IMG/VR virus record: IMGVR_UViG_3300042923_000281
Span: 186,001-250,000 of that record
Direction: 5' to 3' (one strand)
Length of the DNA stretch: 64,000 nt
Both the position numbers and the translations under genes were made by a program. The notes beneath the pieces are model-generated. The model saw only the letters and a program-made list of their open reading frames with translations, was not told the origin of the DNA and made no database searches. Within the stretch, counting starts at the first letter, position 1; the number at the start of each line of letters is the position of its first letter. Of the stretch, positions 20,484-22,749 are shown one piece after another.

Positions 20484-20867
20484 TTATGCACGAAACTCTG
20501 TGGCAGACATTGTTGGTGCATCCACAATCTGTTCGATGACATCGTATCGTCCTCGGTGGAGGAGTAACGCGATCATCGACAGCTTGCCCTTATCGCCCGG
20601 CGTTTGTGCCTGTAGCGAAGAACCGAATCGACTGATGACTCTTTCCATGAGAGAAGCGTACTTCTTCTCAATGATGGTCACCTTCATCGACTCGATCAGG
20701 GCAAGTAGTGGGATCTGTGCTTCGTCCGCCTCTAATGTGCGGATCTTCTCTGTACCCAACTCCATCGCGTGGCTGAATGACTTCCCAATGCCCATGAACT
20801 GAGCCGTTAGGTCAGCATTGTCATCGAAAGCCCCACGGAATGAAGGATGAAACAGGTAGTAATGCAT
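20484..20867 (-). CDS. Hypothetical protein
   Basis: 127 aa, SD AGGAG, followed by a UUCG hairpin. Confidence 0.6.
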   Translation of the reverse strand: MHYYLFHPSFRGAFDDNADLTAQFMGIGKSFSHAMELGTEKIRTLEADEAQIPLLALIESMKVTIIEKKYASLMERVISRFGSSLQAQTPGDKGKLSMIALLLHRGRYDVIEQIVDAPTMSATEFRA

Positions 20868-21104
20868 GTAGCGCTCCTAGTGTGTGCTGCTTCCCCAAGC
20901 AACGTGGTGCGGCATAACTGCCCGCCTGCCTTGAAAGACAAACGGGCAGCTAGAGGCTTTGTCGGTCACTGTTCGACCGAGTCACATGTCGCGGCTGGCA
21001 TGAGCCAGATCGTACAACAGTCCATCCGGGTAACACTCAGGCATCTACTCAGACGGACCTCGAGTAGAGACTGCTCACTGGGTGTGCACCCCCATGAGAT
21101 GTGT

Positions 21105-21350
21105 TCAGTTGCAGTTCATCGGAATGGGCGGGTTGAACACTTCAGTGGCCACGTATCGGCTACTGACGTTACCCAGTCCATCTTCCCGAAGAACTACGAT
21201 ACCTTTGGAGCGGAGCAAATACGGCAGCGGTCCCATGTACAAATCCTCCAGTGGAGGACAGTACCCTTCCATCTCACCGTGAAACTCCATGAGAGGAGGG
21301 GGTGGGCCTGCTTCTAAGCGCCGTCTACGGGCGCCTTTTCGATTGCACAT
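21105..21350 (-). CDS. Small hypothetical protein at the 3' end of the tRNA/ncRNA array
   Basis: SD AGGAG 7 nt before the ATG at 21350. Confidence 0.45.
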   Translation of the reverse strand: MCNRKGARRRRLEAGPPPPLMEFHGEMEGYCPPLEDLYMGPLPYLLRSKGIVVLREDGLGNVSSRYVATEVFNPPIPMNCN

Positions 21351-21372: not shown

Positions 21373-21486
21373 CAGTGAAGCCGTTCTCCTCTCGTGTCCG
21401 GGACTTTTCCCTCATCCTGAGGACTATGCTCCCTGTTCGCCTTACGAGGGTTACTTAGAGCTCGGCTAACGAGTACAGCTTCACTG
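21373..21486 (-). ncRNA. Putative structured ncRNA
   Basis: 12-bp closing stem CAGTGAAGCTGT/ACGGCTTCACTG with internal hairpins; non-coding. Confidence 0.5.
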
Positions 21487-21562
21487 GCGCGCTTTGAATC
21501 AACCAGCGGGACGGCGTCCGCCTACACCCTACGCGCCGCGCAGGAATGCCACTGATTGAAAA

Positions 21563-21677
21563 GGGTCGTCCTGGGGAGACTCAAACTCCCGACCGCTGCC
21601 ACGTTGTTAGGCCCAAGTCCCTCGGAAGGGAGTATGGGCCTGAAAAGGCAGTGCTCTATCAACTGAGCTACAGGACC
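21563..21677 (-). ncRNA. tRNA-like RNA with a 39-nt hairpin insertion in the anticodon loop (pseudo/intron-containing tRNA, Glu-UUC if spliced)
   Basis: GGTCCTG acceptor, GCTC/GAGC D arm, CTGCC/GGCAG anticodon stem around a 46-nt loop, GGGAG-TTTGAGT-CTCCC T arm; G1:G72 mismatch; ends ACCC. Confidence 0.75.
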
Positions 21678-21681
21678 GAAA

Positions 21682-21757
21682 TGGCTCCACGACCTGGACT
21701 CGAACCAGGGACACTACGGTTAACAGCCGTATGCTCTACCAACTGAGCTATCGCGGA
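21682..21757 (-). tRNA. tRNA-Asn(GTT)
   Basis: Full cloverleaf, anticodon loop CTGTTAA, encoded CCA. Confidence 0.95.
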
Positions 21758-21761
21758 ATGT

Positions 21762-21858
21762 GCTCACTGCTGGGCTATACCCAGATCCCCTGCGCTGCCA
21801 ATCCCATTCGCTTCGCCTTGAAGGGGCTTGCGGGATCGGCTGCCAATGGGCAGTGAGC
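21762..21858 (-). ncRNA. Putative structured ncRNA with acceptor/T-arm-like 8+5 stack
   Basis: GCTCACTG/CAGTGAGC stem next to CTGGG-TATAG-CCCAG; internal GCCGATCCC/GGGATTGGC stem. Confidence 0.5.
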
Positions 21859-21863
21859 GGTTT

Positions 21864-21986
21864 ATCAACATCTTCAAGTAGATTTCACCGTACCGTCGGC
21901 TGTGATGTTACTTTCTACTTGCCTACCTTTCGGCTGATTCCCTGCATCCAGGCTCACGCTTTAACTGGATACTTGAAGATGTCGAC
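21864..21986 (-). ncRNA. Putative structured multibranch ncRNA
   Basis: 17-bp closing stem GTCGACATCTTCAAGTA/TACTTGAAGATGTTGAT; internal TCCAG/CTGGA and GCC-GAAA-GGT hairpins. Confidence 0.55.
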
Positions 21987-21989
21987 AAC

Positions 21990-22068
21990 TGGAAGGGGCA
22001 TCTGGATTCGAACCAGAGAATGACAGGATCAAAACCTGTTGCCTTAGGCCAGACTTGGCTACACCCCT
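21990..22068 (-). tRNA. tRNA-Gln(TTG)
   Basis: Cloverleaf, anticodon loop TTTTGAT, TTCGAAT T loop, encoded CCA; A1-U72 and U73. Confidence 0.9.
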
Positions 22069-22108
22069 AAATGCTTGGGACGTCACTCCCGTGTTGCAAT
22101 GTAGCGTT

Positions 22109-22297
22109 GAACGCTTCCCCTTATGTTCCGTTCTCTCTGAGGCGGGACTCGAACCCGCAACGGACATGAGCTCTGATGCCCTAGGGCCGCACTCATTCCA
22201 CACCAACGGACAGGCAGCCACAATGGACTTAGGGTTGTTGGACCGAAGCCCTCACCCTCGGGTATACCAATTCCCCCACTCGTGAGAGGAAGCGTTC
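22109..22297 (-). ncRNA. Large tRNA-like RNA: Leu-type D arm and perfect T arm flanking about 95 nt of extra hairpins, no anticodon loop
   Basis: TG-GGG-GAATTGGTATA-CCC D arm, GCGGG-TTCGAGT-CCCGC T arm, CTCTC..GAG/CTC..GAGAG acceptor, outer GAACGCTTCC/GGAAGCGTTC stem. Confidence 0.7.
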
Positions 22298-22302
22298 GAA
22301 CA

Positions 22303-22379
22303 TGGCGGCTCCAAGGGGACTTGAACCCCTGACCCCCGGCGTGACAGGCCGGTGCTCTAACCAGCTGAGCTATGGAACC
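22303..22379 (-). tRNA. tRNA-Asp(GTC)
   Basis: Full cloverleaf, anticodon loop CTGTCAC, G73 followed by CCA. Confidence 0.95.
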
Positions 22380-22386
22380 TAGAAGA

Positions 22387-22474
22387 TGGTGGAGAGAGAA
22401 GGATTCGAACCTTCGAAGTGCGGTCGCACGTCAGATTTACAGTCTGATCCCTTTGACCACTCGGGAACCTCTCC
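22387..22474 (-). tRNA. tRNA-Tyr(GTA)
   Basis: Full cloverleaf with long variable arm, anticodon loop CTGTAAA, ACCA end. Confidence 0.95.
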
Positions 22475-22482
22475 TAATAGGG

Positions 22483-22581
22483 TGGAAAGGCCGTCGCCAT
22501 TAGCCGCGATGGCGATAACGCCGATCCGTTCGCTGCTCAAAGGCTGCATGGATCACGGCGGCGGAGGCGACGGCCTTTCCA
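22483..22581 (-). ncRNA. Putative structured ncRNA
   Basis: Perfect 16-bp closing stem TGGAAAGGCCGTCGCC/GGCGACGGCCTTTCCA with internal stems; first element after the promoter. Confidence 0.55.
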
Positions 22582-22647
22582 AACGCTCGAAGCCTAGGAC
22601 GTTTTTCGCCTACAACCGTTTAAGGGGTAAGGGACAAAGGCTCTTCA

Positions 22648-22678
22648 CATAGACTACGTCCCTCGTGTAATTTTTTAC
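22648..22678 (-). promoter_or_regulatory. Putative phage promoter for the tRNA/ncRNA array (GTAAAAAA-N13-GTAGTCTATG)
   Basis: Same architecture repeated at 23736..23766; TATG resembles the phiKZ nvRNAP start motif. Confidence 0.55.
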
Positions 22679-22749
22679 ACGATTACAAGGACTTACTTGG
22701 AAAGCAGGCATAAACGCCGTGCATCACACACGGCGCTATGCGGGGAACG

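What the first reader, a model, noticed from the sequence alone, without database searches (positions are those of the whole stretch)
21373..22678. tRNA operon doubling as an array of tRNA-scaffolded and stem-closed ncRNAs
Seen: from one putative promoter, four canonical tRNAs alternate with six other modules, mostly only a few nt apart. Two modules keep tRNA D and T arms but carry cargo hairpins at the anticodon position, one has an acceptor/T-like stack, and three are multibranch RNAs closed by 12-17 bp stems. Known: flanking tRNAs are excised by RNase P and 3' nucleases, which would release the RNAs between them, and engineered tRNA scaffolds stabilise cargo inserted in the anticodon arm. 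Inference: the phage may use tRNA processing to release a set of stable small RNAs, for example decoys for anticodon nucleases or RNA-sensing defences, or protein sponges. I do not recognise these modules as any named RNA family.
Basis: partly seen in the sequence, partly recalled or inferred. Interest (0 to 1): 0.88.

Follow-up and report, generated by a model that had tools for sequence, protein, structure and literature searches.

The report
Phage tRNA operon packed with structured RNAs
A giant nucleus-forming phage carries a 1.8 kb non-coding stretch in which four tRNA genes alternate with at least six folded RNAs of no named family, most of them kept in shape by evolution and swapped like cassettes between related phages; what they do is unknown.

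Summary
The anatomy is real, and lies on the minus strand. Between a conserved promoter-like motif (22681-22648) and 21373 lie tRNA-Tyr, Asp, Gln and Asn, all with encoded CCA. Among them are a leader hairpin and seven non-tRNA modules (A, B, C, D, E, F1, F2), 4-10 nt apart. Rfam recognises only tRNA. That includes module E, a cloverleaf whose anticodon loop is replaced by a ~41-nt hairpin, with no conserved anticodon and no CCA.

Nine related uncultured phages and Pseudomonas phage DT01 show compensatory base changes in A, D, E/F1 and F2. B (unique to this genome) and C (invariant stems) are unproven.

Modules come and go as cassettes, and the window's operon is a recombinant mosaic. An eighth module, T (21104-20911, outside the finding), is the most conserved and ends in the phage's usual terminator. 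One relative keeps A and T with no tRNA within 5 kb, so the locus is an RNA island that recruits tRNAs rather than the reverse.

The closest precedent is T4's tRNA cluster with its stable 'species 1 and 2' RNAs. Release by tRNA processing and any decoy function remain untested inferences. A type I-F CRISPR-repeat resemblance in D is real, but the hairpin is not conserved.

Verdict: new variant of a known kind.

The parts
22648..22681 (-). Promoter-like element: an A-rich palindrome (22681-22664) followed about 20 nt later by TATG (22651-22648).
   Evidence: Unique in the window. Nearly invariant in five relatives. Its layout resembles the phiKZ middle-promoter description: A-rich run, then a TAC motif about 22 nt before the start site (PMC8244752). 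No sigma-70 promoter was found. Function is inferred.
22589..22646 (-). Leader hairpin (GAAGAGCCU...AGGCUUC).
   Evidence: The outer stem changes on both sides in L005, L015 and L016 (GUGCCC...GGGCAC). The fold z-score is only -1.0, so support is weak.
22484..22580 (-). Module A: 97-nt RNA with a 15-bp closing stem, a junction and two inner hairpins.
   Evidence: z -6.7. The same architecture appears in seven independent single-sequence folds. The covariance model also finds it in L018. Across 8 lineages, 19 of 33 pairs show double compensatory changes and 94% of cells are canonical. No shuffle out of 300 reaches the observed values. The alignment was fitted to the model.
22387..22474 (-). tRNA-Tyr(GUA) with encoded CCA.
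   Evidence: ARAGORN; Rfam 56 bits.
22303..22379 (-). tRNA-Asp(GUC) with encoded CCA.
   Evidence: 69 bits.
22109..22297 (-). Module B: 189-nt element closed by a 10-13 bp stem. It contains a canonical T arm and an acceptor-like 3' strand, and is followed by a 40-nt tail with a small hairpin.
   Evidence: T-loop at 22155-22146. The closing stem appears in the minimum-energy fold, but z is only -1.2. There is no tRNA hit at E<=10. It is absent from every relative, so covariation cannot be tested.
21990..22068 (-). tRNA-Gln(UUG) with encoded CCA.
   Evidence: 53 bits.
21866..21983 (-). Module C: 118-nt multibranch RNA with a closing stem of about 13-16 bp.
   Evidence: z -3.7. Present in L004 and L015, absent from L005 and L016. 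The stems are invariant, so covariation is uninformative. The only hint is a GAAA-to-UUCG tetraloop swap.
21762..21858 (-). Module D: 97-nt RNA with a closing stem, a rod and an invariant hairpin.
   Evidence: z -4.2. Five lineages; 7 of 36 pairs are compensatory and 99% of cells canonical; 0 of 300 shuffles reach that. L016 carries a 60-nt version that lacks the rod.
21682..21757 (-). tRNA-Asn(GUU) with encoded CCA.
   Evidence: 67 bits. The sequence is identical in L004, L005 and L015.
21563..21677 (-). Module E: tRNA-like RNA. The cloverleaf body is intact, and the anticodon loop is replaced by an internal loop plus hairpin (about 41 nt). Positions 1 and 72 are mismatched, and the 3' tail is ACCC rather than CCA.
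   Evidence: Rfam tRNA scores 47-52 bits in five lineages. The body is nearly invariant, while the apical insert helix differs in every lineage yet stays paired. The triplet at positions 34-36 reads UUC in four lineages and UCA in L004, so there is no conserved anticodon.
21497..21559 (-). Module F1: 63-nt three-way junction, always directly 3' of E.
   Evidence: z -3.1. It co-occurs with E in all five lineages. Compensatory changes are seen in both inner helices.
21373..21486 (-). Module F2: 114-nt RNA with a 12-bp closing stem, followed by UCUUUUA. It may act as an internal terminator.
   Evidence: z -2.0. The distant phage L023 has the same interior at 81% identity, with a closing stem whose sequence differs and stays paired: 4 double changes.
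21105..21350 (-). Small 81-aa ORF (MCNRKGARRRR...) between F2 and T. This is context, not RNA.
   Evidence: Conserved at both ends between the window and L004, and absent from other lineages. No Pfam or PHROG match.
20911..21104 (-). Module T: roughly 190-nt multi-helix RNA that ends in a GC hairpin plus TTATGCC, the phage's usual gene-end motif. It lies outside the finding's coordinates.
   Evidence: 89% identical to L015. Across 8 aligned lineages (10 by BLAST), 20-21 of 53 pairs are compensatory and 0 of 300 shuffles reach that. No Rfam hit. The same hairpin-plus-TTATGCC motif follows four other minus-strand genes.

Best explanation
This is a non-coding RNA island of a nucleus-forming jumbo phage.

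Proposed mechanism:
1. One transcription unit on the minus strand runs from a phage-type promoter near 22650. It ends either at the U-run after F2 (21373) or at the terminator that closes module T (20911).
2. It encodes four decoding tRNAs interleaved with independently folding RNAs of 60-190 nt.
3. Host RNase P cuts at the 5' end of each tRNA, and probably of tRNA-like E.
4. 3' maturation back to the encoded CCA completes the cut on the other side.
5. Together these cuts free the intervening modules with only a few overhanging bases.
6. The 9-17 bp closing stems seal both ends, so the modules should persist as stable small RNAs, as T4's species 1 and 2 RNAs do.

Shown here:
- The anatomy.
- Selection for structure in A, D, E/F1, F2 and T.
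- Cassette gain and loss, and recombination between phages.
- Persistence of A and T without any nearby tRNA.

Inferred:
- Co-transcription, release and stability.
- Function. Interior sequences stay conserved while the stems drift, which suggests the modules work in trans by being bound. E would offer a tRNA body with no anticodon. Its partners would be tRNA-binding or tRNA-cleaving host factors, or phage proteins.
For: Identity of the phage:
- It is a chimallivirus, with nuclear-shell protein, split RNA polymerase and DNA polymerase genes.
- The nearest isolate is Pseudomonas phage pPa_SNUABM_DT01.

Anatomy:
- tRNAs and E.
- Significant fold z-scores.
- No Rfam family other than tRNA.
- ORFs inside the region have no family match.

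Covariation with shuffle and slid-partner controls:
- A: 19 of 33 pairs compensatory.
- T: 21 of 53.
- D: 7 of 36.
- E+F1: 7 of 56.
- F2: 5 of 36.
- Canonical cells are 94-99%, against 28-50% when the 3' partners are slid.
- Independent single-sequence folds give the same architectures.

Cassette behaviour:
- A is deleted in L003.
- B occurs only in the window.
- C is missing in L005 and L016.
- Relatives carry extra modules and a tRNA-His.

Mosaicism:
- C, D and E are 96-100% identical to L015, although the flanking protein is only 64% identical.
- The leader, F1 and F2 match L004.

Independence from tRNAs:
- L018 has X-A-T with no tRNA.
- F2's interior is conserved in the distant phage L023, with a closing stem of different sequence that stays paired.

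Precedents:
- T4 rnaD lies 1 nt from tRNA-Arg and rnaC lies 6 nt from rnaD. Both are annotated as small stable RNAs, and rnaC carries a T arm.
- An sRNA was detected directly upstream of a tRNA in giant phage 201phi2-1 (PMC11512511).
Against: - There are no expression or end-mapping data for any of these phages. All but DT01 are metagenomic.
- B and C have no covariation support, and B's fold is not better than shuffles.
- The E+F1 and F2 statistics rest on 3-5 sequences. For E+F1 the count of compensatory pairs was reached by 22 of 300 shuffles.
- Module A's alignment was fitted to the model, and reverse-strand hits score about as well as the distant homologues.
- Modules are lost in close relatives, so each is dispensable in some setting.
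- phiKZ itself has small protein genes, not RNA modules, between its tRNAs, so this is not general to chimalliviruses.
- Nothing computed here identifies a binding partner.
Confidence: 0.6

Rival explanations
1. The modules are cis-acting punctuation only. They would be insulators that let neighbouring tRNAs fold, entry sites for processing nucleases, or attenuators and terminators, with no function after release.
For: - The spacing to tRNAs is tight.
- A always sits just upstream of the first tRNA.
- F2 and T end in terminator-like features.
- Individual modules are dispensable in relatives.
Against: - L018 keeps A and T with no tRNA to serve.
- The interior sequences of F2, F1 and T are conserved far more strongly than a spacer needs, while their stems are free to change.
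- E is itself tRNA-shaped.
Confidence: 0.2
2. Module D (and perhaps E) is an RNA anti-CRISPR. It would be a solitary mimic of the Pseudomonas type I-F repeat that titrates Cas6f.
For: - The 5' end of D matches the flanks of the P. aeruginosa I-F repeat hairpin at 15 of 17 bases in the window and 17 of 17 in L004.
- The repeat sequence was confirmed in the literature.
- RNA anti-CRISPRs of this kind exist (PMC10651486).
Against: - In L005 and L016 the would-be Cas6f hairpin is broken without compensation.
- The same bases instead covary with the 3' end of the module: CACUGC/GCAGUG becomes CACUAC/GUAGUG.
- The loop is 4 nt rather than 5.
- The nuclear shell already protects nucleus-forming phages from DNA-targeting CRISPR (PMC13282480).
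Confidence: 0.07
3. The modules are decayed tRNA genes and neutral spacer left over from tRNA gene turnover.
For: - B has a T arm and an acceptor-like strand, but it fails the tRNA model and is unique to one genome.
- Relatives carry other tRNA-like fragments.
Against: - Compensatory changes and near-invariant interiors in A, D, E/F1, F2 and T.
- A, C, D, F1, F2 and T have no tRNA features.
- E's body is conserved across five lineages, where a pseudogene would drift.
Confidence: 0.05
4. The stem-closed modules are miniature inverted-repeat mobile elements that insert between tRNA genes.
For: - They have terminal inverted repeats of 9-17 bp and are 60-190 bp long.
- They are present or absent between close relatives.
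Against: - Each is single-copy in the 64 kb window and in all held loci.
- The terminal repeats differ in sequence between lineages but stay complementary. That is selection at the RNA level, not recognition by a transposase.
- The loss of A in L003 is offset from the repeat ends and uses a 3-bp microhomology.
- No target-site duplications were seen.
Confidence: 0.03
5. F2 and/or T are sponges for the host translational repressor RsmA (CsrA), through GGA motifs.
For: - F2 carries an invariant CCUCAGGAUGAGG, and T an invariant GAUGGAC.
- By my own knowledge these look like RsmA/CsrA sites.
Against: - There are only one or two such motifs per RNA.
- In the consensus fold the F2 motif is paired differently.
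- T's motif is complementary to a conserved loop and more likely forms a pseudoknot (by eye).
- No enrichment test was done.
Confidence: 0.05

Closest known systems
Phage T4 tRNA gene cluster with species 1 (rnaC) and species 2 (rnaD) stable RNAs
   Same: - Non-tRNA stable RNAs of 119-139 nt lie on the same strand, 1-6 nt from a tRNA and from each other, at the distal end of a phage tRNA cluster.
- rnaC carries a T arm and an acceptor-like closure, much like module B.
- Their function has never been established (my knowledge).
   Different: - There is no sequence similarity (T4 was in the searched set).
- Here there are seven or eight modules rather than two, interleaved between the tRNAs rather than appended.
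- Most have long closing stems and no tRNA features.
- They turn over as cassettes.
- Two of them (A, T) persist without tRNAs.
sRNA immediately upstream of a tRNA in giant phage 201phi2-1 (and PAK_P3)
   Same: Experimentally detected short transcripts sit at the 5' side of a phage tRNA that is driven by a middle promoter (PMC11512511). This is the position of the leader and module A.
   Different: - Those were described as products of premature termination in a 5' UTR.
- No structure family, covariation or array was reported.
- Homology was not tested here.
Engineered tRNA scaffolds, and viral tRNA-linked small RNAs (MHV68 tRNA-miRNA units, mascRNA)
   Same: - Module E is a natural tRNA body carrying a hairpin where the anticodon loop should be.
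- tRNA-processing enzymes are used to liberate adjacent non-tRNA RNAs (my knowledge of these systems).
   Different: - Those are eukaryotic or synthetic.
- Rfam's mascRNA model scores only 17.8 bits here, on tRNA-Asp.
Bacterial Y RNA-like YrlA (RF02553) and tmRNA
   Same: These are tRNA-mimicking modules joined to non-tRNA helices.
   Different: - YrlA scores 21 bits against a threshold of 69, and the hit spans two adjacent genes.
- ARAGORN finds no tmRNA.
- In E the ends are at the acceptor stem, the reverse of YrlA's topology (my knowledge).
RNA anti-CRISPRs (solitary repeat units)
   Same: They are short phage-encoded structured RNAs that act as decoys. The 5' end of D resembles a type I-F repeat.
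   Different: The repeat-like hairpin is not conserved among D homologues.

Membership tests
tRNA (RF00005), for module E | Cloverleaf with acceptor, D, anticodon and T arms, scoring above the gathering threshold. | tested here: met
   48.2 bits against a threshold of 29. Scores are 47-52 bits in four relatives.
tRNA (RF00005), for module E | Seven-base anticodon loop with an anticodon conserved among orthologues. | tested here: not met
   There is a 41-nt insert in the loop. Positions 34-36 read UUC in four lineages and UCA in L004. The insert does not form a bulge-helix-bulge intron motif (by inspection).
tRNA (RF00005), for module E | 3' CCA, which is encoded in all four neighbouring tRNAs, and a paired 1:72 position. 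| tested here: not met
   The tail is ACCC. Position 1:72 is G-G or A-G in all lineages.
tRNA (RF00005), for module B | Cloverleaf scoring above threshold. | tested here: not met
   No hit over 22070-22302 even at E<=10. Only a T-loop is present.
Phage tRNA-cluster stable RNAs (T4 species 1 and 2 type) | A non-tRNA RNA gene on the same strand within a few nt of tRNA genes in a phage tRNA cluster. | tested here: met
   Spacers are 4-10 nt. In T4 they are 1-6 nt.
Phage tRNA-cluster stable RNAs (T4 species 1 and 2 type) | Co-transcribed with the tRNAs, cut out by tRNA-processing enzymes, and accumulating as a stable species. | not testable with these tools
   No transcript data exist for these phages.
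Phage tRNA-cluster stable RNAs (T4 species 1 and 2 type) | Sequence homology to rnaC or rnaD. | tested here: not met
   No BLAST match at E<1e-3 against a set that included the T4 locus.
RNA anti-CRISPR (type I-F solitary repeat), for module D | Repeat-like sequence able to form the Cas6f hairpin with the C6-G20 base pair. | tested here: met
   Window, L004 and L015 have CUGCC-CAUU-GGCAG within a 15-17 of 17 match to the repeat flanks.
RNA anti-CRISPR (type I-F solitary repeat), for module D | The hairpin is maintained among homologues. | tested here: not met
   It is broken in L005 and L016. The bases covary with the module's 3' end instead.
RNA anti-CRISPR (type I-F solitary repeat), for module D | The host carries the cognate CRISPR-Cas system, and the RNA binds Cas6f. 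| not testable with these tools
   The host of the window's phage is unknown.
YrlA / Y RNA (RF02553) | Match to the covariance model at the gathering score. | tested here: not met
   21.1 and 19.8 bits against 69; 24.7 bits in L017.
tmRNA | tRNA-like domain plus a tag reading frame, as detected by ARAGORN or Rfam. | tested here: not met
   None found in the window.
Miniature inverted-repeat transposable element | Multiple copies with conserved terminal repeats and target-site duplications. | tested here: not met
   Single copies only. The terminal stems covary rather than being conserved. The rest of the 277 kb genome was not searched.
Any Rfam 15 family | Match at the gathering score. | tested here: not met
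   Only tRNA matches in the window and in 12 related or comparison loci.

The most novel reading that the evidence does not exclude
The locus is an RNA-only accessory island that jumbo phages shuffle among themselves. It would be a toolkit of stable decoy RNAs, made alongside replacement tRNAs. Those tRNAs are the queuosine family (Tyr, Asp, Asn, plus His in relatives) and Gln. The toolkit would include a natural 'tRNA scaffold' (E) that offers a tRNA body without an anticodon. Together they would blunt host nucleases and sensors that attack tRNAs or phage RNA in the cytoplasm, which is the one compartment where nucleus-forming phages are exposed.
Probability: 0.2. Interest if true: 0.85.

Novelty: new variant of a known kind. 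Interest (0 to 1): 0.62.

Why it matters
Stable non-tRNA RNAs in a phage tRNA cluster have been known since T4's species 1 and 2 RNAs, and their purpose is still unexplained.

This clade offers a richer and more tractable case:
- At least five new RNA families have comparative support.
- They behave as exchangeable cassettes.
- One is a tRNA whose anticodon has been replaced by a hairpin.
- Two persist without any tRNA nearby.

A cultured relative, phage DT01 on Pseudomonas aeruginosa, carries modules A and T. That makes the old question of what such RNAs do directly testable.

If they prove to be decoys or sponges, RNA would join proteins as a general counter-defence currency of nucleus-forming phages. 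The closing-stem and tRNA-flank design would also be a ready-made way to express stable RNAs in bacteria.

Tried and rejected
1. **Rfam.** Searched at gathering and permissive thresholds over the window, the operon, module T and 12 other loci. Only tRNA matched. The weak YrlA, mascRNA and plastid-UTR hits are tRNA look-alikes.
2. **Protein coding.** The four longest ORFs inside the region overlap tRNAs and have no Pfam or PHROG match.
3. **Convergent '+' strand gene.** The ORF 20847-21317 with its 'terminator' at 21318 is an antisense artefact. The real genes run on the minus strand.
4. **CRISPR-repeat mimic for D.** The resemblance is real but the hairpin is not conserved.
5. **Intron reading of E's insert.** There is no consistent anticodon after any excision, no bulge-helix-bulge motif, and the insert is far too short for a group I intron.
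6. **Host mimicry.** An exact-pattern scan for T's conserved core in 185,579 bacterial and archaeal genomes found nothing.
7. **Wider distribution.**
   - Pattern scans of IMG/VR for A, F2 and T returned only this clade.
   - BLAST of the operon against GenBank phages hit only tRNAs.
   - E's body did not identify a parent isoacceptor.
8. **Literature.** Searches found no description of such arrays.
9. **C and B.** No covariation evidence could be obtained.
Full report
**What the window is.**
- The 64 kb window comes from a 277 kb uncultured viral contig, IMGVR_UViG_3300042923_000281.
- It encodes a nuclear-shell protein, split RNA polymerase beta subunits and phiKZ-type DNA polymerases.
- Its nearest isolate is Pseudomonas phage pPa_SNUABM_DT01, with 84% identity in an RNA polymerase subunit.

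**Checking the observation.**
- The feature lies on the minus strand.
- ARAGORN and Rfam find tRNA-Tyr(GUA), Asp(GUC), Gln(UUG) and Asn(GUU). Each is followed by an encoded CCA.
- Rfam adds a fifth tRNA match, at 21677-21566, with a 41-nt insertion in the anticodon loop. This is module E.
- Reading the minus strand, the order is:
  - a promoter-like A-rich palindrome and TATG (22681-22648)
  - a leader hairpin
  - module A, then Tyr and Asp
  - module B, then Gln
  - modules C and D, then Asn
  - modules E, F1 and F2
  - a U-run
- Spacers are 4-10 nt, except for a 40-nt tail after B.
- Folds beat dinucleotide shuffles for A (z -6.7), D (-4.2), C (-3.7), E and F1 (-3.1), and marginally F2 (-2.0). 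They do not for the leader or B.
- No sigma-70 promoter is present. The conserved A-rich/TAC/TATG arrangement fits the published description of phiKZ middle promoters (PMC8244752), but its function is inferred.
Only one module (E) is a demonstrable tRNA scaffold, and there are seven modules plus a leader rather than six.

**Relatives.**
- The 280-aa protein upstream of the locus served as an anchor.
- With it I recovered three other IMG/VR lineages (L003/L004, L005) and five metagenomic ones (L015, L016, L017, L018, L023). DT01 carries the same gene.
- All have an RNA-rich, ORF-poor stretch in the same place.

**Modules behave as cassettes**.
- A is missing from L003 through a microhomology deletion.
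- B exists only in the window.
- C is absent from L005 and L016.
- L004 has an extra 173-nt module and a tRNA-His.
- L005, L015 and L016 share a 65-nt module between Tyr and Asp.
- L005 and L017 carry acceptor-less tRNA-like fragments.

**The window's operon is a recombinant**.
- Its leader, F1 and F2 are 94-98% identical to L004, and module A (87%) is also closest to L004.
- Its C, D and E are 96-100% identical to L015, and its tRNA-Asn is identical in L004, L005 and L015 alike. The flanking protein in L015 is only 64% identical.

**Selection for structure.**
- Independent single-sequence folds of every homologue give the same architecture for A, D, E and F1.
- Module A:
  - A covariance model built from five sequences also finds A in DT01, L017 and L018.
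  - Over eight lineages, 19 of 33 pairs show double compensatory changes.
- Results with column-shuffle and slid-partner controls:

| Module | Lineages | Compensatory pairs | Shuffles (of 300) reaching the observed count |
|---|---|---|---|
| A | 8 | 19 of 33 | 0 |
| T | 8 | 21 of 53 | 0 |
| D | 5 | 7 of 36 | 0 |
| E+F1 | 5 | 7 of 56 | 22 |
| F2 | 3 | 5 of 36 | 4 |

- E+F1 exceeded every shuffle on percent paired and covariation score, though not on the pair count.
- F2 exceeded 296 of 300 shuffles with only three sequences.
- F2's case is qualitatively strong. The distant phage L023 keeps the interior at 81% identity, while its 12-bp closing stem has a different sequence that stays paired.
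- C's stems never vary and B has no homologue, so neither can be judged.

**Module E.**
- Its acceptor, D, anticodon and T stems are almost invariant in five lineages. There is one compensatory change, in the T stem.
- The apical helix of the insert is different in every lineage but always paired.
- The junction is an asymmetric internal loop: UUU(U)C on the 5' side and AACA(N)ACRY on the 3' side.
- Positions 34-36 read UUC in four lineages and UCA in L004, so no excision gives a conserved anticodon.
- The 1:72 position is mismatched, and the tail is ACCC rather than CCA.
- E is therefore a tRNA-shaped RNA that is unlikely to decode.
- It is always followed within 7 nt by the three-way junction F1, so the two may be one unit.

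**Beyond the given coordinates.**
- A BLAST with relatives' terminal module found it in the window at 21104-20911. It lies downstream of a small 81-aa ORF that only the window and L004 possess.
- This module, T, is present in all ten lineages. It has five helices with abundant covariation and, by eye, a candidate pseudoknot.
- T ends in a GC hairpin followed by TTATGCC. The same motif follows four other minus-strand genes in the window, so it is this phage's ordinary terminator.
- The '+' strand ORF 20847-21317 that seemed to converge on the operon is an antisense artefact.
- In L018 the locus consists of modules X, A and T with no tRNA within 5 kb either side.
- A and T are therefore the conserved core, and the tRNAs and other modules are variable cargo.

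**What it is not.**

| Alternative | Result |
|---|---|
| Any Rfam family | Only tRNA matches |
| Protein coding | No family match for the internal ORFs |
| Mobile inverted-repeat elements | Single copy; stems covary rather than being conserved |
| Host mimic at sequence level | T's core is absent from 185,579 prokaryotic genomes |
| RNA anti-CRISPR (module D) | Resemblance real, hairpin not conserved |

- On the last row: the 5' end of D resembles the P. aeruginosa type I-F CRISPR repeat, matching 15-17 of the 17 bases that flank the loop.
- In L005 and L016 that hairpin is broken. The same bases covary with the module's 3' end instead.
- An anti-CRISPR role is therefore unlikely.

**Mechanism.**
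- Best-supported model: a single phage-polymerase transcript; RNase P cuts at each tRNA 5' end; 3' trimming goes back to each encoded CCA; the modules are freed with short overhangs; the closing stems protect both ends.
- These steps rest on established tRNA-processing biology and on the T4 precedent. None was shown here.
- On function, I favour trans-acting, protein-bound RNAs, for three reasons:
  - interiors are conserved while the stems drift;
  - A and T do not need tRNAs;
  - the cassette turnover and recombination resemble accessory, arms-race loci.
- The companion tRNAs are the queuosine family plus Gln. By my own knowledge these are the substrates of several anticodon nucleases.
- Cytoplasmic RNA is the exposed flank of nucleus-forming phages (PMC13282480).
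- A decoy role is a reasonable guess, but no more than that.

**Comparison with what is known.**
- The closest precedent is the T4 tRNA cluster.
  - rnaD lies 1 nt from tRNA-Arg, and rnaC lies 6 nt from rnaD.
  - Both are annotated as small stable RNAs, and rnaC carries a T arm.
  - There is no sequence similarity.
- In giant phage 201phi2-1 an sRNA was detected directly upstream of a tRNA (PMC11512511).
- Pseudomonas phage D6 also has stem-closed spacers between tRNAs, and a 'tRNA-OTHER' with a 14-nt anticodon loop.
- phiKZ has small protein genes there instead.
- The kind of thing is therefore known. The families, the interleaved array, the tRNA-scaffold member, the cassette exchange and the tRNA-independent core are new.

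**Limits.**
- All relatives but one are metagenomic.
- Sequence numbers are small (3-8 per family).
- Module A's alignment is model-fitted.
- There are no transcript data.
- B and C remain unproven.
- Only 64 kb of the genome was searched for extra copies.

Noticed in passing
window 20911-21104 (-): Module T is a ~190-nt five-helix RNA outside the finding's coordinates. It is conserved in all ten lineages, and 20-21 of its 53 pairs are compensatory. Its P3 loop (GGUCCRUC) is complementary to an invariant GAUGGACU about 20 nt downstream, which makes a candidate pseudoknot.
   Followed up: partly
window minus strand, motif starts 56929, 22713, 20917, 20462, 10667: A GC-rich hairpin immediately followed by TTATGCC recurs just after gene ends. 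It is probably this phage's terminator, perhaps overlapping a TATG-type promoter for the next gene.
   Followed up: partly
window 20847-21317 (+) versus 21105-21350 (-) and 20484-20867 (-): The 156-aa '+' ORF is antisense to module T, to a small 81-aa ORF and to the start of a conserved 127-aa gene (MHYYLFHP...). It is probably spurious. The neighbouring genes are co-directional with the RNA island.
   Followed up: partly
window 21682-22474 (-); L004 8040-8112; L015 6943-7015: The decoding tRNAs are Tyr(GUA), Asp(GUC) and Asn(GUU), plus His(GUG) in relatives. That is exactly the queuosine-modified family, together with Gln(UUG).
   Followed up: no
L018 5920-6335: This relative's locus holds modules X, A and T back to back, with no tRNA gene within 5 kb either side.
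   Followed up: yes
L023 5444-6895 and 8640-8870: A more distant 259 kb phage has about 1.35 kb with no ORF of 60 aa or more. That stretch holds two tRNAs, X-, Y- and A-like elements and an F2 homologue. Two ORFs follow, then T.
   Followed up: partly
L093 (Pseudomonas phage D6) 1585-1732, 2015-2095, 2096-2295: Another Pseudomonas jumbo phage has inter-tRNA spacers closed by 8-13 bp stems. It also has an annotated 'tRNA-OTHER' with a 6-bp anticodon stem and a 14-nt loop. That element does not reach the Rfam tRNA threshold.
   Followed up: partly
window 21838-21858 (-); L004 7668-7688: The 5' end of module D matches the flanks of the P. aeruginosa type I-F CRISPR repeat hairpin, at 15 of 17 bases in the window and 17 of 17 in L004.
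   Followed up: yes
L016 6660-7110; L017 5850-6310: An ORF with a signal-peptide-like start and staphylococcal-nuclease-like motifs sits inside or beside the RNA island in two relatives. The motifs were judged by eye and no tool was run.
   Followed up: no
window 22210-22245 (-) versus 21600-21650 (-): B contains a 5-bp stem enclosing a UUCG hairpin followed by AACA. This is the same layout as E's anticodon-arm insert (hairpin, then UAACA). The motif is short and was seen by eye only.
   Followed up: no
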